Source of the DNA: Iphione sp. A-MEVVRFRX5
Taxonomy: Eukaryota
Length of the DNA: 64,000 nucleotides
NCBI GenBank assembly: GCA_976226885.1
Contig: OZ320315.1
Span: 63,426,001-63,490,000, forward strand
Reading direction: 5' to 3'
Shown: positions 33,854 to 58,779 of the stretch, one piece after another
Position numbering within the stretch: the first letter of the stretch is position 1
How the letters are laid out: every line of letters begins with the position of its first letter
Made by a program: the position numbers and the translations under genes
Notes under the pieces: model-generated
What the model saw: only the letters and a program-made list of their open reading frames with translations
The model's database searches: none
What the model was told of the DNA's origin: nothing

Positions 33854-33978
33854 TTTAACTACGAAATTGAGTGAAAAGTCCCCAGGTTTCGACACGATAG
33901 CCCGAGGGATGGGCCGATAGGCCCATCCCGAGGGATGAGTGTTGAAACCTGGACTTTTCACGAAATGTAGTGGTTAAA
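33854..33978 (+). mobile_element. Long imperfect hairpin with GA/GA mismatches; probable end of a decayed non-autonomous Crypton-like element
   Basis: GTGAAAAGT..AGGTTTC..CAC-GA..CCC-GA-GGGATGGGCC-[GATA]-GGCCCATCCC-GA-GGG..GA-GTG..GAAACCT..ACTTTTCAC-GA. It is followed by CCGCCATCTT (34128-34137) and CCAATCA (34160-34166), the same motif order as in the array elements. Confidence 0.6.
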
Positions 33979-36659
33979 TTCGGTTCTAAAATGGTTATAT
34001 TTGAACTAATATTATAAGTAATATAATATTATAACTAACCTTTTACATGGCTTAAATTATCCATATTTTGCCCTTTGAAGTGGTTCCCCTACCACGTACA
34101 GCTGCTTCCCTCCATTTTCAAAACAAACCGCCATCTTAGTGTCATGTGACCTCTCTCATCCAATCAGATTTCAGGAAATGCAATGAATATTGATTACTCC
34201 CTCCTTGACCAATGAGCTACCACGTTCTGCTCTAATGAATATTTATACAGTGACTAGTCCACGGTTTCAATATGTTTCTTCAATGTTGCGAGTATTGCGG
34301 CGTCACGCCGAACCATTTTAGAACATTCCTTCAAGGCTGTGATGGAATCGATCTAAGACTCGCATGTAAAAAGGAAACAGGCATTGGCTGGCATCACTTG
34401 TCACTAAAAGCCATCGGACAAGCCGAGACGAGGTTATCTGGGAATCAGTACCCCACCAGCTCGGCACCGAAGCCTTATTCCGTCCCCATCCGATTCCTAA
34501 GCCTTTCAGAAACATCCTGCCCTCTACAATACCAAATAGCTCTGCCACCCTTGCACCAGACAGGTAAAGAAAGGATTGGGAGCGCTTGCCATGTAGGAGA
34601 ACAGGCCAAACGTCGCCATGGCAACGTGTGGAAACTCAAATGTTTGCAATGTGACGTGGTATTTGGTGGAGCTATCACTTTGGCTATCGAGGCACCGGAT
34701 GTAGCTTCTGCAAATTTTGATCTTTTCTAAAAGTGCCGCTTTCTTATGTAGCCACCTCAGAAAGCTGAGTCAGCTTCATCACCGGCCTGACTCTGATTTG
34801 TCCGTCTGTGTGTTTGTGTGTCTGTCTGTCTCCCTCCCATCCACGCCCTCTTTTTACTTGCATCTCGTTCACCCCTTGAGATTTTTCTGTGTCACGTTCC
34901 CGTTTTCTCCTTCTTTTACGGAAACACACACGCACATACACGCGTAAACACACACAAGAACACACAGCGGTGTGGGACTTTTAATACATGCTGGTCTATC
35001 ACCTGACAAACAGTGCAAATACAAAAATTTCAATTATCCCTACCGTACATGCCATACATATAGAATTTTTTCTTAATTGGGGACCGATCTCAGCAGAGTT
35101 AACAAGAATAGTTGTCAACGTTAATTTCTGTAAAGTAGGGATAATGATATCACTGTAGATAATTATGTGCTTCTAAAAAAGAAGAGATACAACGTAGAAG
35201 GGCAGTACACGTTTTACCCTTGCAAATGCACTCGATATGTCAAAAGAAATATAAAGTAAGAGAGAAACACTGGAAGAGTCTTAGAGGTTTTATTTACTTT
35301 TAAAGGTGACTGTCTGTCGTCATATTTGGGGAGACGCACAGACGCCCTCTCAGGAGAGATAGAAAACGAATAAGCGTGCGCAAAATACAGCAAGCTGTCT
35401 CTGGCAGAGCCCAAGGACACCAGCGCCACCTACCGAAGTTGGTGTCATGCTGGCAACACGTCGGGTAGATTAATTTACCCCCCCCAGTAGGTGTCCCTGC
35501 GATCGATCGCTGTTGCCCTAGGCTCTTTTTTCAGCCCCCACCGTTTGCCGTGCCCCCTCCCATCCAATCCCCCCTAACAGGTAGGTAGGTAGGTTGGCGG
35601 CAGCAGGGGTGTTCGTGGTTGGTTGGCAGAGGCTGGCGGCAGAAAAACGACGCGTTTGGTGAAGAGTATTATTTCCACAGTGATTTTTTTCTCTTTCACC
35701 TTCACTCTGACCTTCATGTCTGGGATGATGCTAAGCATCTGGAGCGTGGTAATCCTTCTACCTGCTTCCAACCTTGCAACTGGAGGACTGAAAAGGTAGG
35801 TCGGAGAGGGGAAGGTGTATCTGTGTGACTTTATTTTGGCAATCCGTTCTCAAAATTGGTTTTATCTATCATGCTGCAACAATCCATATATATTCATGCG
35901 CTGACGTCTAGCGTGTCGGAAACAAAGGTTGCTAAACTGATAATATCCTTTTAATGACGATCATATTTCTACTAGTTAGCCGTCCAGTTGGTCAGGCTAT
36001 TTACTTTCAGAGTCGATATAGCTGGGATGTGTAGAAATGACTCCTGAGAGTTAACAATATCGCCGGACAAAGATTTTTCCATGTTCCTTCAGTTTAGTCA
36101 ATCTATATACCCATATCTTAAATTATTTCGTCAGTTTTTAAAGTTACTCCTCTAACCTTCAAAGTGACACAGAAACCCAAGTGGAGAGTTGTACGAACTA
36201 ATGTCAACCAGCGATTTAAATACGATTCAGTAAACCAGTGTTTCAGTTAACAGCTAAAACGGAAATAAATTGAAAGCTAGACTCACGTTCTCCTCGCTTA
36301 TGATCTTTTTCTTCTGAGACCTACATAGTATATTCGATGAAAAAGGTTTCTTTTAATCTCCTTTGTTCGCTGCTGACAACCCTGAGTGGATTGCACGGTT
36401 TTTAGCTCTACTCAATATTTAGTCCAGATACTTGTGTGTGGAGAAAGTTAAACTGAGAGAGAGAGGGGGGAGGGAGGGAGGGGAGGAGGGTGGGAGGGAT
36501 TTAGAGAGGGAGGGAGGGAGGAAAGGAGGGAGAGGGGAATTGTTTTGTGATCAGACAATGTTCCTTTGGGGAATACATGTACCGTAGAATCCCGCCACAA
36601 CGGACATCGACGGGACTGGCACCAGGTCGTCCGTTGTCGGGGGTGTCCGCTGTGGCCGA

Positions 36660-49506: not shown

Positions 49507-50047
49507 ATGATATCCACCTGTACATGTAAATGAGGGCACCGGATATGTGGGTAAGTGCGTGTGCTTGAGTGTTGGGCGCCGTTTAATGGTGCCCTCTACA
49601 GGTGAGGAGAGAACCCATTAGCGATGGACGCAGAGAGACCGAGGCCCAATTAACCCAGGAATGAACGCGCGCGGGCAGCCTCGTTATGAGAGCAATGATA
49701 AATAGGGCGGTGCAGGGCCGACAGGCGGATGGCCCAGTGATACATGCCAAGCCACGACGTCTGACGGATTGCCGCACCACTTCCAATGTAACCTGTGAGC
49801 CTCCGGCGCATGCGTAGTTTAATGATTTGGAGGCAAGAGGAGGGGGGCGGCGTTGGGGTGGGGTGGGATGGCTGATAGATTGGTGTATATTATGGTTTGT
49901 GGTTAAGCATAGTTGGCATGACTATTAAGGTCAAGGTAAGCGGTCAGCATCAGTAGCTTGGCTACTTTCAGTCTGGAGGTGTTATTAGTCTCTGGTCATA
50001 GGGACTTAAACTTTTAAGTATTGCCATCTGCCCCTCGGACCAAAGGG

Positions 50048-50193
50048 ATTAGCGATGGGAACCTACTACGAGTGCCAAGGACTCAGCGCGAAGCCCGAGA
50101 GGCTTGGTCCAGTCTGCCGCAGGCAGACGGGACCAAGCCTCGAGGGCTGAGCGCTGAGTCCTTGGCACTCGTAATAAGGTTCCCATCGCTAAT
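50048..50193 (+). other. 146-bp terminal hairpin, copy 1 (65 Watson-Crick pairs, G.A mismatches, GCA triloop)
   Basis: Paired by hand from the outside in: 17-bp stem, bulged A, 1 bp, C.A, 23-bp stem, tandem GA/GA, 5 bp, tandem GA/GA, 12 bp, A.G, 7 bp, loop GCA (50119-50121). Confidence 0.95.
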
Positions 50194-50598
50194 TGCTGTT
50201 CTGATATGGTTTTATTCACATTAAAATTAGCTAATTCAAAGTGAAAATCAACCTTCGCTTACTTGGCCGCCATCTTGAGTATCTAGTCTCATTCAGTATA
50301 GAAGCTGCAATTCTATTGGCTAATTCAAAATGCGTAATTATTTTTTTATTTTATCTACAGTACACAATTTCGTTGTATTTTTAATTGTTATGTAATAAAA
50401 CAGTTTTTAAAACAGTTCAATATTTTTATTGTCCACATTTGATGAACTTTATCCAGTATGTGAAAAAAAGGATTTTCATTATAACATGACATTGCGTGAT
50501 CATAACATGTGGCGCCAACTAACAACTCCGCCAAGTATACTGCGTAGTTTTCACTGGAAAGGAAGCTGTGAAAGTCACATTGTGATAGTCAATATGAT

Positions 50599-51701
50599 TT
50601 ATCTGAAGTTAAATGTGCAATTATTGAAAGTGTTGGATCCAGAAAGAAGGGCTGCCATAGCATTCACAGTGGTGGATGCACTCGGTTCTCTTGTAGACTG
50701 TGTCGACAGCATCACGCTTGATTCCGTTGTGACAATTTCCCCCTCTGATGACGAGTGGCTGTATGTTGCTAATGTTTTCGACATCTCTCGGCGGACTTCT
50801 GAGGTGACTCCTCCTCTGTAGACATCAAGTGAGGCTGCACTCTTGTGTCCCGTGATCGCCTGGATTTTTTCGGATGAGAAGCCTGCGACATCTAACGCTG
50901 TAACACAAGTACGCCGAATACAGTGATTCGTGTACTGTTTGCTTAGGCCTGCATCAACACTCATCTCCTTCATCATGTTGTGAAGGGTGTTCACTCCAAG
51001 AACTTGATTGGCGAACCAGGGACCATCTCCACTTGGAATGGACTTGTTAGGACGTTGGAAGAAGAATTCATTGTTCTTGTTCAACTTTGCCATATATTTC
51101 TGGAAGTGTCTGACTGGACATCGACTTGGATTCCCAGGAGTTTCATACATTCTTCTATCAGTGTCAGACTCATCATCGTTGAGCCCAGACTTTGTCTTTT
51201 CCGCCTCCCAGTGCGTCATGGTTACGTACTTGGCACCGGATCCATCTTCCTTTACCTCGAATGAATTCTTCTTTAATTGGCGGAGTCCCTCTCTACCACG
51301 TCGTCCGTAGTGGAGCATGATTTCGAAGAAAACTCTTCGTTGGAGCCCTTTTGGTGTGTCTGTGAAGGCGTGAGTATAGAGCTTCTCAATGTCCTCAGGG
51401 TCAATTAATTCTTTGTGAGTGGTACGATCCAAACCTTCATTACGTAATTTGGCAAGGTAACCTGAATAAGTTGCGTTGCTCTGACGAAAAGCTGTATCTG
51501 TCAAAATGTTGATTCTGCGGTTGTGTGGGGGGCTGCAAAGGTGGCGTTGTATGCCTGCACGAATGTTCTTCATGGCAGATTTACTGTAGAATTCGCCAGT
51601 CTTGCTACGCACAACTGTATAAAACTGCTCAAGTTTTATAGCCAATATATCATCATCCAAGTGCTCAAAGTTACTGTCATCACCGACCTCTACAAGCCAC
51701 T
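50599..51701 (-). CDS. Crypton tyrosine recombinase (DUF3504-like), exon 2, copy 1
   Basis: Acceptor tttccAG at 51703-51702. The spliced frame gives TKWAVRIFKEWL...FYTVVRSKTGEFYS. Catalytic set present: GRRGRE (R), NHCIRRT (HxxR), TGHKS (H), LDVY (Y). Total 484 aa. Confidence 0.9.
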
Positions 51702-51853
51702 CTGGAAATATATATAAACGGGAAAATAATAATGGTTAGGGAATTCCTTTATTCTTTTCCCTCAAAAATACAAACTCCACATCGCTAAGGCATATTTTTG
51801 ACAACGTTTTTGTGATGTTTGCTTGCTTTCTAAGAGAAGGAATTCTCATTTAC

Positions 51854-52205
51854 CTTTGAATATGCGGACTGCCCACTTAGTTTGCAGTTCTGTACTGTGA
51901 CGGGTACGGTTCCTCTTCATTTCGTCTATTTCAGCCTCAGATGGCATGTGGAATCTCTTCTTTTCCTCATCTTTTTCCTCTTCTGACGTTGGGGGGCTGG
52001 CTGGGCATGCACTTTCATTCATTTCAACGTCATCAATTTTCTCCAGCTGCTCACGGTTCGCAGTCTCCTTCTGGTTAGTTTCAACATCTTCAATCACAAA
52101 GAGGTGGTAGGGGAAGATCGTTGGTCGATATTTGGAGATTACCAGAAATATTCTGTCCTTAAAAAGCACTAAATCACCGATTTCAATGCTCTGTGACTCT
52201 GCCAT
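51854..52205 (-). CDS. Crypton tyrosine recombinase, exon 1 (117 codons plus 1 nt), copy 1
   Basis: ATG at 52205 and donor AAAG|GTAAAT at 51853; a 152-nt intron joins it in frame to exon 2. Confidence 0.85.
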
Positions 52206-52300
52206 TGTGTATGTTAAAGATCGTCTGCTATTGTCGCTCCCCTGTTTTTAACCAATCAGAGTCCACAGAATAGCACTTCCGTTTCCAGTGTAAACAATAC
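52206..52300 (-). promoter_or_regulatory. Putative promoter of the recombinase gene
   Basis: CCAATCA box and tandem ETS-like CACTTCCGTTTCC(A/G)G directly upstream of the ATG; the same in the other copies. Confidence 0.45.
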
Positions 52301-52698
52301 GAACGTTGCACACTTTTTCCTGGATTAAGTGAAATTATTGCTTTCTTTGCACTGAGCTATGTACAAAACATCACATCTTATGTACCAAGGTTCTATAGGT
52401 ATAATACTTTATCATTATAATTATTTAAAATGATTTTAACCTTGTCTGAACATTTGAAGCGGTGAACAAAATGGCGTCTTTCTGCTTCCCATTCATTCAG
52501 AGAACAGGTGCGTTTGATTATCCAATTAAATTTTATGTTACTTTATGGAATGTGTGCTGAGCCATCTGACCCGTTCACTCAATTGGCAATGCTATAAGAT
52601 AGCAGTATCACTCCCCACCATATTAGAACTTCTGACAATCCAGCTGACTGCGCAGATCTTGAACATTTGTGAATTTGCTTTCTACTTGGGCCAAAGGG

Positions 52699-52844
52699 AT
52701 TAGCGATGGGAACCTACTACGAGTGCCAAGGACTCAGCGCGAAGCCCGAGAGGCTTGGTCCAGTCTGCCGCAGGCAGACGGGACCAAGCCTCGAGGGCTG
52801 AGCGCTGAGTCCTTGGCACTCGTAATAAGGTTCCCATCGCTAAT
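52699..52844 (+). other. 146-bp terminal hairpin, copy 2
   Basis: Same sequence as 50048-50193. Confidence 0.95.
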
Positions 52845-53249
52845 TGCTGTTCTGATATGGTTTTATTCACATTAAAATTAGCTAATTCAAAGTGAAAATC
52901 AACCTTCGCTTACTTGGCCGCCATCTTGAGTATCTAGTCTCATTCAGTATAGAAGCTGCAATTCTATTGGCTAATTCAAAATGCGTAATTATTTTTTTAT
53001 TTTATCTACAGTACACAATTTCGTTGTATTTTTAATTGTTATGTAATAAAACAGTTTTTAAAACAGTTCAATATTTTTATTGTCCACATTTGATGAACTT
53101 TATCCAGTATGTGAAAAAAAGGATTTTCATTATAACATGACATTGCGTGATCATAACATGTGGCGCCAACTAACAACTCCGCCAAGTATACTGCGTAGTT
53201 TTCACTGGAAAGGAAGCTGTGAAAGTCACATTGTGATAGTCAATATGAT

Positions 53250-54352
53250 TTATCTGAAGTTAAATGTGCAATTATTGAAAGTGTTGGATCCAGAAAGAAG
53301 GGCTGCCATAGCATTCACAGTGGTGGATGCACTCGGTTCTCTTGTAGACTGTGTCGACAGCATCACGCTTGATTCCGTTGTGACAATTTCCCCCTCTGAT
53401 GACGAGTGGCTGTATGTTGCTAATGTTTTCGACATCTCTCGGCGGACTTCTGAGGTGACTCCTCCTCTGTAGACATCAAGTGAGGCTGCACTCTTGTGTC
53501 CCGTGATCGCCTGGATTTTTTCGGATGAGAAGCCTGCGACATCTAACGCTGTAACACAAGTACGCCGAATACAGTGATTCGTGTACTGTTTGCTTAGGCC
53601 TGCATCAACACTCATCTCCTTCATCATGTTGTGAAGGGTGTTCACTCCAAGAACTTGATTGGCGAACCAGGGACCATCTCCACTTGGAATGGACTTGTTA
53701 GGACGTTGGAAGAAGAATTCATTGTTCTTGTTCAACTTTGCCATATATTTCTGGAAGTGTCTGACTGGACATCGACTTGGATTCCCAGGAGTTTCATACA
53801 TTCTTCTATCAGTGTCAGACTCATCATCGTTGAGCCCAGACTTTGTCTTTTCCGCCTCCCAGTGCGTCATGGTTACGTACTTGGCACCGGATCCATCTTC
53901 CTTTACCTCGAATGAATTCTTCTTTAATTGGCGGAGTCCCTCTCTACCACGTCGTCCGTAGTGGAGCATGATTTCGAAGAAAACTCTTCGTTGGAGCCCT
54001 TTTGGTGTGTCTGTGAAGGCGTGAGTATAGAGCTTCTCAATGTCCTCAGGGTCAATTAATTCTTTGTGAGTGGTACGATCCAAACCTTCATTACGTAATT
54101 TGGCAAGGTAACCTGAATAAGTTGCGTTGCTCTGACGAAAAGCTGTATCTGTCAAAATGTTGATTCTGCGGTTGTGTGGGGGGCTGCAAAGGTGGCGTTG
54201 TATGCCTGCACGAATGTTCTTCATGGCAGATTTACTGTAGAATTCGCCAGTCTTGCTACGCACAACTGTATAAAACTGCTCAAGTTTTATAGCCAATATA
54301 TCATCATCCAAGTGCTCAAAGTTACTGTCATCACCGACCTCTACAAGCCACT
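53250..54352 (-). CDS. Crypton tyrosine recombinase, exon 2, copy 2
   Basis: Same translation as copy 1. Confidence 0.9.
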
Positions 54353-54504
54353 CTGGAAATATATATAAACGGGAAAATAATAATGGTTAGGGAATTCCTT
54401 TATTCTTTTCCCTCAAAAATACAAACTCCACATCGCTAAGGCATATTTTTGACAACGTTTTTGTGATGTTTGCTTGCTTTCTAAGAGAAGGAATTCTCAT
54501 TTAC

Positions 54505-54856
54505 CTTTGAATATGCGGACTGCCCACTTAGTTTGCAGTTCTGTACTGTGACGGGTACGGTTCCTCTTCATTTCGTCTATTTCAGCCTCAGATGGCATGT
54601 GGAATCTCTTCTTTTCCTCATCTTTTTCCTCTTCTGACGTTGGGGGGCTGGCTGGGCATGCACTTTCATTCATTTCAACGTCATCAATTTTCTCCAGCTG
54701 CTCACGGTTCGCAGTCTCCTTCTGGTTAGTTTCAACATCTTCAATCACAAAGAGGTGGTAGGGGAAGATCGTTGGTCGATATTTGGAGATTACCAGAAAT
54801 ATTCTGTCCTTAAAAAGCACTAAATCACCGATTTCAATGCTCTGTGACTCTGCCAT
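54505..54856 (-). CDS. Crypton tyrosine recombinase, exon 1, copy 2
   Basis: Same as copy 1. Confidence 0.85.
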
Positions 54857-55349
54857 TGTGTATGTTAAAGATCGTCTGCTATTGTCGCTCCCCTGTTTTT
54901 AACCAATCAGAGTCCACAGAATAGCACTTCCGTTTCCGGTGTAAACAATACGAACGTTGCACACTTTTTCCTGGATTAAGTGAAATTATTGCTTTCTTTG
55001 CACTGAGCTATGTACAAAACATCACATCTTATGTACCAAGGTTCTATAGGTATAATACTTTATCATTATAATTATTTAAAATGATTTTAACCTTGTCTGA
55101 ACATTTGAAGCGGTGAACAAAATGGCGTCTTTCTGCTTCCCATTCATTCAGAGAACAGGTGCGTTTGATTATCCAATTAAATTTTATGTTACTTTATGGA
55201 ATGTGTGCTGAGCCATCTGACCCGTTCACTCAATTGGCAATGCTATAAGATAGCAGTATCACTCCCCACCATATTAGAACTTCTGACAATCCAGCTGACT
55301 GCGCAGATCTTGAACATTTGTGAATTTGCTTTCTACTTGGGCCAAAGGG

Positions 55350-55495
55350 ATTAGCGATGGGAACCTACTACGAGTGCCAAGGACTCAGCGCGAAGCCCGA
55401 GAGGCTTGGTCCAGTCTGCCGCAGGCAGACGGGACCAAGCCTCGAGGGCTGAGCGCTGAGTCCTTGGCACTCGTAATAAGGTTCCCATCGCTAAT
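55350..55495 (+). other. 146-bp terminal hairpin, copy 3
   Basis: Same sequence as 50048-50193. Confidence 0.95.
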
Positions 55496-55900
55496 TGCTG
55501 TTCTGATATGGTTTTATTCACATTAAAATTAGCTAATTCAAAGTGAAAATCAACCTTCGCTTACTTGGCCGCCATCTTGAGTATCTAGTCTCATTCAGTA
55601 TAGAAGCTGCAATTCTATTGGCTAATTCAAAATGCGTAATTATTTTTTTATTTTATCTACAGTACACAATTTCGTTGTATTTTTAATTGTTATGTAATAA
55701 AACAGTTTTTAAAACAGTTCAATATTTTTATTGTCCACATTTGATGAACTTTATCCAGTATGTGAAAAAAAGGATTTTCATTATAACATGACATTGCGTG
55801 ATCATAACATGTGGCGCCAACTAACAACTCCGCCAAGTATACTGCGTAGTTTTCACTGGAAAGGAAGCTGTGAAAGTCACATTGTGATAGTCAATATGAT

Positions 55901-57003
55901 TTATCTGAAGTTAAATGTGCAATTATTGAAAGTGTTGGATCCAGAAAGAAGGGCTGCCATAGCATTCACAGTGGTGGATGCACTCGGTTCTCTTGTAGAC
56001 TGTGTCGACAGCATCACGCTTGATTCCGTTGTGACAATTTCCCCCTCTGATGACGAGTGGCTGTATGTTGCTAATGTTTTCGACATCTCTCGGCGGACTT
56101 CTGAGGTGACTCCTCCTCTGTAGACATCAAGTGAGGCTGCACTCTTGTGTCCCGTGATCGCCTGGATTTTTTCGGATGAGAAGCCTGCGACATCTAACGC
56201 TGTAACACAAGTACGCCGAATACAGTGATTCGTGTACTGTTTGCTTAGGCCTGCATCAACACTCATCTCCTTCATCATGTTGTGAAGGGTGTTCACTCCA
56301 AGAACTTGATTGGCGAACCAGGGACCATCTCCACTTGGAATGGACTTGTTAGGACGTTGGAAGAAGAATTCATTGTTCTTGTTCAACTTTGCCATATATT
56401 TCTGGAAGTGTCTGACTGGACATCGACTTGGATTCCCAGGAGTTTCATACATTCTTCTATCAGTGTCAGACTCATCATTGTTGAGCCCAGACTTTGTCTT
56501 TTCCGCCTCCCAGTGCGTCATGGTTACGTACTTGGCACCGGATCCATCTTCCTTTACCTCGAATGAATTCTTCTTTAATTGGCGGAGTCCCTCTCTACCA
56601 CGTCGTCCGTAGTGGAGCATGATTTCGAAGAAAACTCTTCGTTGGAGCCCTTTTGGTGTGTCTGTGAAGGCGTGAGTATAGAGCTTCTCAATGTCCTCAG
56701 GGTCAATTAATTCTTTGTGAGTGGTACGATCCAAACCTTCATTACGTAATTTGGCAAGGTAACCTGAATAAGTTGCGTTGCTCTGACGAAAAGCTGTATC
56801 TGTCAAAATGTTGATTCTGCGGTTGTGTGGGGGGCTGCAAAGGTGGCGTTGTATGCCTGCACGAATGTTCTTCATGGCAGATTTACTGTAGAATTCGCCA
56901 GTCTTGCTACGCACAACTGTATAAAACTGCTCAAGTTTTATAGCCAATATATCATCATCCAAGTGCTCAAAGTTACTGTCATCACCGACCTCTACAAGCC
57001 ACT
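55901..57003 (-). CDS. Crypton tyrosine recombinase, exon 2, copy 3
   Basis: As copy 1 except GLNNDESD instead of GLNDDESD; catalytic residues intact. Confidence 0.9.
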
Positions 57004-57155
57004 CTGGAAATATATATAAACGGGAAAATAATAATGGTTAGGGAATTCCTTTATTCTTTTCCCTCAAAAATACAAACTCCACATCGCTAAGGCATATTTT
57101 TGACAACGTTTTTGTGATGTTTGCTTGCTTTCTAAGAGAAGGAATTCTCATTTAC

Positions 57156-57507
57156 CTTTGAATATGCGGACTGCCCACTTAGTTTGCAGTTCTGTACTGT
57201 GACGGGTACGGTTCCTCTTCATTTCGTCTATTTCAGCCTCAGATGGCATGTGGAATCTCTTCTTTTCCTCATCTTTTTCCTCTTCTGACGTTGGGGGGCT
57301 GGCTGGGCATGCACTTTCATTCATTTCAACGTCATCAATTTTCTCCAGCTGCTCACGGTTCGCAGTCTCCTTCTGGTTAGTTTCAACATCTTCAATCACA
57401 AAGAGGTGGTAGGGGAAGATCGTTGGTCGATATTTGGAGATTACCAGAAATATTCTGTCCTTAAAAAGCACTAAATCACCGATTTCAATGCTCTGTGACT
57501 CTGCCAT
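57156..57507 (-). CDS. Crypton tyrosine recombinase, exon 1, copy 3
   Basis: Same as copy 1. Confidence 0.85.
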
Positions 57508-58779
57508 TGTGTATGTTAAAGATCGTCTGCTATTGTCGCTCCCCTGTTTTTAACCAATCAGAGTCCACAGAATAGCACTTCCGTTTCCGGTGTAAACAAT
57601 ACGAACGTTGCACACTTTTTCCTGGATTAAGTGAAATTATTGCTTTCTTTGCACTGAGCTATGTACAAAACATCACATCTTATGTACCAAGGTTCTATAG
57701 GTATAATACTTTATCATTATAATTATTTAAAATGATTTTAACCTTGTCTGAACATTTGAAGCGGTGAACAAAATGGCGTCTTTCTGCTTCCCATTCATTC
57801 AGAGAACAGGTGCGTTTGATTATCCAATTAAATTTTATGTTACTTTATGGAATGTGTGCTGAGCCATCTGACCCGTTCACTCAATTGGCAATGCTATAAG
57901 ATAGCAGTATCACTCCCCACCATATTAGAACAGATTGCATGCATTATCACTGATTATCATGAAATGTAACCATTTTGGTAGTTACCATGATACTGGTTTA
58001 TTCCTTATTTCGAGGGAACCAGGACTACACCAGTTAACTTGTACATATAGTTGGTTTGATCCCGTTGAGCCATCGATAGAAGGTGCATTTTCATTTAATA
58101 AATGTAAAGATATAATCAAACCTGATACAGTATCAATCTACAGTACTAAACAGAGTAACCGGTGTACCGGTCTGCCTGAATTGTTCACAGGAGTGCACAG
58201 GAGCCTACACGATGTAAACAGTCATCAAGAACCATTATCCCTGCTGAAACCAAGCAAGTGGCGGATCACCAGGTAGCAACCTTCTGGTCTGGCGGTAAAG
58301 CCATGCAAGAGCTTTCAGATTGAAACAGGCTAAACAACACTGCCATTGCAACATAGAAGGCCATGCGTGATAACCTGTACAAAACCTTAGCTCCATGTAC
58401 CACACCATACCGCTCCCCCCCATTTTAGTGCTACCGTGATAAAAGCCAATCGATACGCTCTCCATGCGGAATTTCATGTAGGATAAAGAAATTTTAACTA
58501 GATGAGATCAAAGTGCACTTGTTTCGATACAAAGGGAACATGCCAAGTGAAAATAAACGACGATGCAAAGCCAAGGTTCTTCCCTGCAAGGTCATCCAGT
58601 TCGTGACAACATGGTCCTGGCGATACTTTCATGCCATGTACAGGCAAATATAGCTTGCCTGGCTAGATTTCACTGTAAGGCAACCCATTTATTCTCCCAT
58701 TTTCGTCAATGTAATTATGAACACTACTAGGTCAGAGATATTAGATATTTGATATTCTCCTTGTTAAACAAAGCCATAC

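What the first reader, a model, noticed from the sequence alone, without database searches (positions are those of the whole stretch)
50040..57933. Head-to-tail array of three intact Crypton tyrosine-recombinase elements
Seen: period exactly 2651 bp, 2.98 units, only two differences noticed, and every copy retains promoter motifs, intron and the R-HxxR-H-Y catalytic set. Established: Cryptons are intron-containing tyrosine-recombinase DNA transposons proposed to move via circular intermediates, and intact copies are uncommon in animals. Inference: a very recent concatemer, produced by repeated integration of a circle into its own site or by insertion of a rolling-circle multimer; this would be a snapshot of an active family.
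Basis: partly seen in the sequence, partly recalled or inferred. Interest (0 to 1): 0.8.

Follow-up and report, generated by a model that had tools for sequence, protein, structure and literature searches.

The report
Three-copy tandem array of Crypton transposon
Three complete, almost identical copies of a small jumping gene (a Crypton, moved by a Cre-like tyrosine recombinase) lie head to tail, separated by two identical 61-base spacers that are not part of the element. The array is real and young, but it was not built simply by a circle re-entering its own site.

Summary
Observation confirmed. Window 50040-57931 is periodic at exactly 2651 bp (2.98 units) with only two internal differences. 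Each unit carries an intact two-exon gene on the minus strand. Its product has DUF3504 and phage-integrase domains and the full R..HxxR..H..Y catalytic set.

New here:
- Five diverged sister lineages elsewhere in the genome fix the true termini. The element is 2590 bp, so the array is E-61-E-61-E, and its outer ends are exact element ends.
- The 61-bp spacer and both flanks are unique in the 1.18-Gb assembly. No other copy above about 72% nucleotide identity exists.
- Both differences are CpG transitions private to the outer copies, so the three copies were identical at birth.
- A second, older array on contig C17 has two copies directly abutted and sharing ACAC. That is what circle-into-own-site integration predicts, and the window array is not like that.

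Best reading: a founding dimer E-61-E, amplified by one 2651-bp unit through unequal exchange, either homologous or recombinase-mediated. An "active family" is not shown. No reads could be obtained, so copy number rests on the assembly.

The scan had already noted the terminal hairpin and split palindrome of these Cryptons on other DNA of this genome. It had not noted a tandem array.

The parts
50040..57931 (+). Whole array: E-61-E-61-E, period 2651 bp
50040..52629 (+). Crypton copy 1 (2590 bp). Private CpG transition at 52287 (G to A), 82 bp upstream of the ATG
   Evidence: Termini fixed by sister lineages; difference
52630..52690 (+). Spacer 1, 61 bp. Not part of the element; unique in the genome apart from spacer 2
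52691..55280 (+). Crypton copy 2 (2590 bp). Carries the shared state at both variable sites
55281..55341 (+). Spacer 2, identical to spacer 1
55342..57931 (+). Crypton copy 3 (2590 bp). Private CpG transition at 56479 (C to T), giving D176N
50047..50193 (+). Left-end palindrome of about 146 nt (copy 1). The same structure lies at 52698-52844 and 55349-55495
   Evidence: dG -82 kcal/mol, z -19. In 13 diverged copies 96.7% of cells are paired and 42 of 67 pairs show compensatory changes
50198..50210 (+). Inner inverted repeat GTTCTGATATGGT just inside the palindrome. Also at 52849 and 55500
52617..52629 (+). Right-end repeat ACCATATTAGAAC, the reverse complement of the inner repeat with one mismatch. 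Also ends at 55280 and 57931
51854..52205 (-). Recombinase exon 1 (ATG at 52205, 117 codons plus 1 base). Copies 2 and 3 at 54505-54856 and 57156-57507
51702..51853 (-). Intron, 152 nt, GT..AG, phase 1. Its position is conserved in five sister lineages
50599..51701 (-). Recombinase exon 2 (DUF3504 and Phage_integrase domains, catalytic R-HxxR-H-Y, stop TAA). Copies 2 and 3 at 53250-54352 and 55901-57003

Best explanation
Shown: window 50040-57931 holds three head-to-tail copies of a 2590-bp autonomous Crypton, a DNA transposon whose only gene is a tyrosine recombinase. Each copy is complete. It has a covarying palindrome of about 146 nt at the left end, and a 13-bp repeat just inside that palindrome that pairs with the right end. 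It also has a two-exon, 484-codon recombinase gene on the minus strand with all catalytic residues. The copies are separated by two identical 61-bp spacers that do not belong to the element, and the array's outer ends are exact element termini. The copies were identical when the array formed; since then each outer copy has gained one CpG transition.

Inferred history:
1. Recombinase-mediated insertion produced a founding dimer E-61-E. In this view the 61 bp is host DNA lying between two target-like sites. The sequence just left of each element (CTCGGAC, CTTGGGC) resembles the left junctions of sister lineages and the element's own right end TTAGAAC.
2. One further 2651-bp unit (E+61) was then added by unequal exchange between the two copies on sister chromatids. 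This could be ordinary homologous recombination or the element's own recombinase acting on non-allelic ends. The second route is equivalent to excising a 2651-bp circle and reintegrating it.

The array is therefore a recent local amplification of a single-locus element. It is not evidence that the family is spreading through the genome.
For: - Periodicity, boundaries and the two differences.
- True termini: homology to five diverged lineages with unrelated flanks starts at unit position 1-2 and ends at 2590.
- Spacer and flanks are unique in the genome.
- Both differences are CG to CA or CG to TG, each private to one outer copy, while the middle copy has the shared state at both sites. This fits three identical copies at birth.
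- The two spacers are identical, so all copies descend from one E+61 unit. McGurk & Barbash used the same logic for a hobo array (PMC5932611).
- Recombinase identity: DUF3504 2e-13 and Phage_integrase 2e-9; catalytic residues invariant and aligned to XerA; exon 1 and intron position conserved in sister lineages.
- Contrast case: the C17 array has two abutted copies sharing ACAC, and its junction folds into one continuous palindrome.
- In the window the spacer sits exactly at the split point of that palindrome.
- Left-flank junctions of 16 copies tend to end in GG or a purine, as do both junctions here.
Against:
- Two same-orientation insertions 61 bp apart with none elsewhere in 1.18 Gb is improbable unless reinsertion is strongly local. 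I could not test that.
- No empty site (flank-spacer-flank, or flank-flank) is available, so the spacer may have been brought in by the element rather than being host DNA.
- The target-like look of the two left junctions is weak (3-5 of 7 positions), and it is equally predicted by aberrant excision at a pseudo-site.
- Gene conversion could make an older array look young.
Confidence: 0.55

Rival explanations
1. A pre-formed multimer was inserted in one step. An aberrant excision, or a copy-out from a donor array, gave a 2651-bp circle of E plus 61 bp of foreign flank. The circle multimerised by rolling-circle replication or recombination. It was then inserted, or a whole E-61-E-61-E composite was transposed, using the outermost left and right ends, losing one spacer.
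For: The array length is exactly 3 x 2651 - 61 and both outer ends are true termini. All copies and both spacers were identical at birth. The spacer matches neither flank nor anything else in the genome. No donor copy exists in the assembly. Cryptons in Chlamydomonas rise in copy number despite clean excisions, so a replicative step is suspected (PMC9977147).
Against: A classical tyrosine-recombinase integration is a single reciprocal exchange at one site. On a circle with RE-61-LE junctions it would leave a spacer at one end of the array, and none is there. No circle or rolling-circle function is known for Cryptons. No trace of a donor locus was found.
Confidence: 0.22
2. The element's own 2590-bp circle integrated repeatedly into its own junction.
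For: This mechanism does seem to operate in the clade. The C17 array has abutted copies with the ACAC core at the left end, junction and right end.
Against: It predicts RE-core-LE junctions with no spacer. Here both internal junctions carry the same 61-bp non-element insert.
Confidence: 0.04
3. Assembly artefact in copy number. The true locus has one or two copies, and the third comes from mis-assembly or from collapsed or expanded haplotypes.
For: No read evidence could be obtained. Near-identical tandem repeats are a classic source of copy-number error.
Against: The two outer copies each carry a private CpG transition, which is a biological mutation type, and the copies are otherwise free of indels. 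The array is only 7.9 kb in an assembly of 89 contigs; that long reads could span it is my inference. An independent array of a sister lineage exists on C17.
Confidence: 0.08
4. This is a tandemly duplicated host gene (a domesticated DUF3504 protein), not a mobile element.
For: The family occupies a single locus. DUF3504 genes have been domesticated repeatedly in animals (PMC3212892).
Against: The full catalytic set is kept, whereas domesticated DUF3504 genes have lost it. Sister lineages at many unrelated loci share the same precise ends, palindrome and gene. The duplication boundaries coincide with the element termini.
Confidence: 0.02

Closest known systems
Animal Cryptons (CryptonA lineage; Kojima & Jurka 2011, PMC3212892; model of Goodwin et al. 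2003)
   Same: A small element whose only gene is a tyrosine recombinase that matches DUF3504. The R-H-R-Y catalytic residues are intact, the gene contains an intron, copy number per lineage is low, and there are no long terminal repeats. A relative (the C17 array) shows a 4-bp terminal direct repeat, ACAC.
   Different: The literature describes Crypton ends as featureless apart from 4-6-bp direct repeats. This clade has a covarying terminal palindrome of about 146 nt and a 13-bp repeat linking the two ends. In the papers I searched, tandem arrays are not described for Cryptons.
CryptonF-1_cRei of Chlamydomonas, the first Crypton seen moving (PMC9977147)
   Same: It inserts at a short target resembling its own terminus (CACCG against CAYCG). 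Here the left junctions loosely resemble the right end TTAGAAC. Its recombinase also drives rearrangements between copies and target-like sites.
   Different: It belongs to a different Crypton group (fungal/algal F group). No activity is shown here. No tandem arrays are reported there.
Tandem dimers and arrays of P-element and hobo in Drosophila (McGurk & Barbash 2018, PMC5932611)
   Same: Full-length DNA transposons lie head to tail. An identical junction sequence in every repeat shows descent from one dimer. Expansion is by unequal exchange, and the arrays form quickly and are young.
   Different: There the junction is the 8-bp target-site duplication from two insertions at the same site. 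Here it is 61 bp, and the enzyme is a tyrosine recombinase that makes no target-site duplication.
Tandem integration of bacterial tyrosine-recombinase elements (SGI1, PMC2297512, title and abstract only; CTX prophage arrays, from my own knowledge)
   Same: Site-specific integration of a circle next to a resident copy gives head-to-tail arrays. The C17 array fits this pattern. CTX also uses a folded single-stranded hairpin site.
   Different: These are prokaryotic systems. The arrays there have hybrid att junctions with no foreign spacer. Nothing here shows single-stranded intermediates.

Membership tests
Crypton (tyrosine-recombinase DNA transposon) | Encodes a tyrosine recombinase with the catalytic R-H-R-Y residues | tested here: met
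   Pfam Phage_integrase 2e-9 and DUF3504 2e-13. R135, H260, R263, H286 and Y295 are conserved in alignment A1 and aligned to XerA 5hxy. All three copies are open.
Crypton (tyrosine-recombinase DNA transposon) | The recombinase is the only protein: no reverse transcriptase, RNase H or methyltransferase (separates it from DIRS, Ngaro and PAT) | tested here: met
   The element is 2590 bp. The only long frames are the two recombinase exons. Exon 1 has no Pfam domain. No RNA gene was found.
Crypton (tyrosine-recombinase DNA transposon) | Short (4-6 bp) direct repeats at both termini and no long terminal repeats | tested here: inconclusive
   In the window only C or AC is shared between the left junction and the right end. 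The C17 relative has a clear ACAC at the left end, junction and right end. There are no LTRs or long TIRs, but there is a one-sided terminal palindrome and a 13-bp end-linking repeat.
Crypton (tyrosine-recombinase DNA transposon) | Copies at unrelated loci with the same precise ends (evidence of mobility) | tested here: inconclusive
   Met for the clade: five or more sister lineages have the same ends and unrelated flanks. Not met for this exact family, which exists only as this array.
Crypton (tyrosine-recombinase DNA transposon) | Moves through an excised circular intermediate | not testable with these tools
The abutted C17 junction is compatible with this but does not prove it.
TE tandem array from a dimer expanded by unequal exchange | Full-length copies head to tail with the same junction sequence at every repeat | tested here: met
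   The two 61-bp spacers are identical, the period is exactly 2651 bp, and there are no indels.
TE tandem array from a dimer expanded by unequal exchange | The junction equals the element's target-site duplication (double insertion at one site) | tested here: not met
   The junction is 61 bp. The element's core repeat is at most 4 bp. Two nearby sites would be needed, not one.
Own-site (att junction) tandem integration of a circle | Copies abut directly and share the crossover core | tested here: not met
   Not met in the window, where a 61-bp spacer lies at both junctions. Met in the C17 array of a sister lineage.

The most novel reading that the evidence does not exclude
The tandem array is a functional launch pad. 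Because integration splits the element's long palindrome, a single integrated copy lacks the complete recombination site. A head-to-tail array restores right-end/left-end neighbourhoods, so unit-length copies (2651 bp here, 2583 bp on C17) can be copied or recombined out without losing the donor. This would resemble CTX prophage arrays in Vibrio. It would explain how a 'conservative' tyrosine-recombinase transposon gains copies, and why about 1% of sampled Crypton loci in this genome are tandem.
Probability: 0.1. Interest if true: 0.8.

Novelty: new member of a known kind. Interest (0 to 1): 0.45.

Why it matters
Crypton transposition has been observed only once (in Chlamydomonas), and its mechanism is inferred by analogy.

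This locus and the C17 array give two natural products of the recombinase.
- C17 preserves an intact right-end/left-end junction in the chromosome. That is the sequence expected at the circle junction, with a 4-bp core.
- The window array is three still-intact copies only two mutations old. It is a good place to look for circles, for array-length polymorphism and for an empty site.

The array also shows that copy gain in these elements can be local and tandem, which bears on how low-copy Crypton lineages persist. It is a useful specimen rather than a new kind of system.

Tried and rejected
The target-site logo therefore rests on about 16 left and 12 right junctions.
- Further junctions: a genome-wide pattern search for a right end followed within 130 bp by a left end gave 16 hits. 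Only the window (two junctions) and C17 are real. The 13 others have no recombinase or hairpin nearby.
- Origin of the spacer: there is no match elsewhere in the genome or in any held locus. Its first 10 bp equal the inner repeat of another lineage (L023), but at chance level, E 6.4.
- One unequal crossover between two already diverged copies is rejected. The middle copy would then be T/A at the two variable sites, and it is C/G.
- Simple tandem duplication of a genomic segment is rejected. It gives a whole number of periods, not 3 x 2651 - 61 with element termini at both ends.
- Unit-length contigs of homologues from other samples (L050, L051) show no circular overlap and no such termini.
- No tRNA or Rfam family lies in the array.
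- Other long frames in the window have no Pfam domain, so the host organism was not identified. The best named protein relatives are corals, at 36-40% identity.
Full report
**Observation**

The stretch is periodic at exactly 2651 bp. A base-by-base comparison puts the periodic region at 50040-57931, which is 7892 bp or 2.977 units. It has no indels and two internal differences. Position 52287 is A in copy 1 and G in copies 2 and 3. Position 56479 is T in copy 3 and C in copies 1 and 2. The window has no N. Tandem Repeats Finder does not list the array, because its longest period is 500.

**What each unit encodes**

The gene is on the minus strand.
- Exon 1 runs 52205-51854, with the ATG at 52205 and the donor G|GTAAAT.
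- The intron is 51853-51702 (152 nt, phase 1, acceptor TTTCCAG).
- Exon 2 runs 51701-50599 and ends in the stop TAA.

Exon 2 matches DUF3504 (2e-13) and Phage_integrase (2e-9), and more weakly QRICH1 and DUF3435. In an alignment with 12 database homologues, R135, H260, H286 and Y295 are invariant and R263 is nearly so. HMMER aligns the HxxR, H and Y to those of the XerA recombinase 5hxy. Exon 1 has no Pfam domain. It is nevertheless conserved (48-65% identity), ending ...TKWAxRIFK, in five sister lineages, each followed by an intron of about 100-150 bp.

All three copies are open. The only coding change is D176N in copy 3, in a variable loop. The best database relatives are only 50% identical, and the named ones are corals.

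**True element ends**

A DNA search of the window's own genome (1.18 Gb, 89 contigs) found nothing closer than 72% identity. It did find many diverged relatives. Their homology starts at unit position 1-2 and stops at position 2590, next to unrelated flanks.
- The left end reads (A/C)CAAAGGGATTAGC...
- The right end reads ...CCATATTAGAAC.

The element is therefore 2590 bp. The last 61 bp of the period (52630-52690 and 55281-55341) is a spacer, and the array is E-61-E-61-E. Both outer boundaries are exact element termini.

The spacer occurs nowhere else in the genome, and both flanks are single-copy. The spacer has no significant similarity to the element or to any held locus.

**End structure**

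Unit positions 8-154 form a palindrome of about 146 nt (dG -82 kcal/mol, z -19). Across 13 diverged copies, 96.7% of cells pair and 42 of 67 pairs show changes on both sides. G-U pairs are very few, and the structure far exceeds the shuffled and slid controls.

Just inside the palindrome lies GTTCTGATATGGT. This is the reverse complement, with one mismatch, of the right end ACCATATTAGAAC, and the two covary in the C17 lineage. Joining the two ends would therefore extend the palindrome. This agrees with earlier notes of this scan on other windows, which I used as leads and re-tested here.

**A second array, of the other kind**

On contig C17 (L035/L036) a lineage with 65% nucleotide identity forms two copies with period 2583. 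They are 99.0% identical and each is broken by a different stop codon. The copies abut directly, and ACAC occurs at the left end, the junction and the right end. Its chromosomal junction folds into one continuous palindrome (dG -88, z -23). This is what integration of a circle into its own junction predicts.

In the window, the same pairing of the right end with the inner repeat is predicted, but the 61-nt spacer loops out exactly at the split point.

A genome-wide pattern search for right-end/left-end junctions with up to 130 bp between them found only these two arrays. Among about 260 recombinase loci listed by two searches, a third direct pair (C22, period 2797) and three inverted pairs appear. 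I could not fetch them.

**History of the window array**

Both differences are CpG transitions (CG to CA and CG to TG). Each is private to one outer copy, and the middle copy has the shared state at both. So all three copies, and both spacers, were identical at birth.

Two mutations in 7.9 kb is about 2.5e-4 per site. At 1e-9 to 1e-8 per site per generation this gives tens to hundreds of thousands of generations, and fewer if methylated CpGs mutate faster. This dating is an inference. Gene conversion could also keep an older array uniform.

Some histories can be excluded.
- Simple tandem duplication of a genomic segment cannot give 3 x 2651 - 61 with element ends on both sides.
- One unequal crossover between two already diverged copies would give a middle copy with the opposite combination of variants.
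- Reintegration of the 2590-bp circle into its own junction would leave no spacer.

Two histories remain.
- (a) A founding dimer E-61-E arose from two insertions 61 bp apart. One 2651-bp unit was then added by unequal sister exchange, either homologous or catalysed by the recombinase between non-allelic ends. The same logic and precedent hold for hobo and P-element arrays (PMC5932611).
- (b) A pre-formed E+61 multimer or composite was inserted using its outermost ends.

The sequence left of each element (CTCGGAC, CTTGGGC) looks like the left junctions of sister lineages and loosely like the right end TTAGAAC. Both histories predict this.

I favour (a), because it needs only known reactions. 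The decisive test is the empty allele: does it contain the 61 bp or not?

**Limits**

The private CpG variants, the absence of indels and the small size of the array argue against an assembly artefact but do not exclude it.

**Comparison with the literature**

Cryptons are described as low-copy elements whose only end feature is a short direct repeat (PMC3212892; PMC8969392). Activity has been seen only in Chlamydomonas, where copy number rose despite clean excisions (PMC9977147). I found no paper reporting Crypton tandem arrays.

The element is a new member of a known kind. The array is an ordinary type of transposon rearrangement, seen here for the first time in this class as far as I could search. 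It is informative mainly as a specimen for experiments.

Noticed in passing
L035/L036 = G000:C17:46834155-46839321: A second Crypton tandem array from a sister lineage with 65% nucleotide identity. It has two copies, period 2583, 99.0% identical, directly abutted, with ACAC at the left end, junction and right end. Each copy is broken by a different stop codon. The junction rebuilds one continuous palindrome of about 190 nt.
   Followed up: yes
G000:C22:981213-984471: Two equal-scoring DUF3504 matches lie in the same orientation 2797 bp apart, probably a third tandem array. Inverted pairs lie at C15:20415641/20417910, C13:9432436/9435547 and C19:15504003/15507736.
   Followed up: partly
whole genome G000: The genome is very rich in Crypton recombinase genes. 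The protein search gave 1926 first-look candidates; all 111 scored had E below 1e-111 and most were without stops. They fall into many diverged lineages (48-77% amino-acid identity) that look single-copy or low-copy.
   Followed up: partly
L005:858-1026 (G000:C10:54925757-54925924) against window 50041-50208: The terminal palindrome of the C10 sister element is 94% identical to the window's, while the rest of the element is only about 69% identical (77% at amino-acid level). L007 shows 93% over the first 112 nt. Either the constraint on the palindrome sequence is very strong or end modules are exchanged between lineages.
   Followed up: no
alignment A2, columns 76-77/83-84 against 128-129/135-136 (window about 50091-50099 and 50141-50149): Two tandem G·A mismatches inside the palindrome are kept in most lineages. 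They are converted to perfect pairs in L005 (3' arm changed) and in L011 (5' arm changed). This fits a one-strand-specific fold, as other notes of this scan propose.
   Followed up: partly
window 52287 (copy 1): The private CpG transition of copy 1 changes CCGGAA to CTGGAA on the gene's strand. It lies in a CCGGAAACGGAAGTG stretch (two ETS-like cores) about 82 bp upstream of the ATG. An inverted CCAAT box lies about 45-60 bp upstream. Promoter function was not tested.
   Followed up: no
window 52630-52690: The 61-bp spacer contains three short palindromes (CAGCTG, CTGCGCAG, AGATCT). It begins TTCTGACAAT, which is identical to the inner repeat of another Crypton lineage (L023:1653-1662). Statistically this is at chance level.
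   Followed up: partly
window 33854-34270: Another first-reader note reports an unrelated hairpin of the same design here. Neither the window recombinase nor the array's palindrome matches there by BLAST.
   Followed up: no
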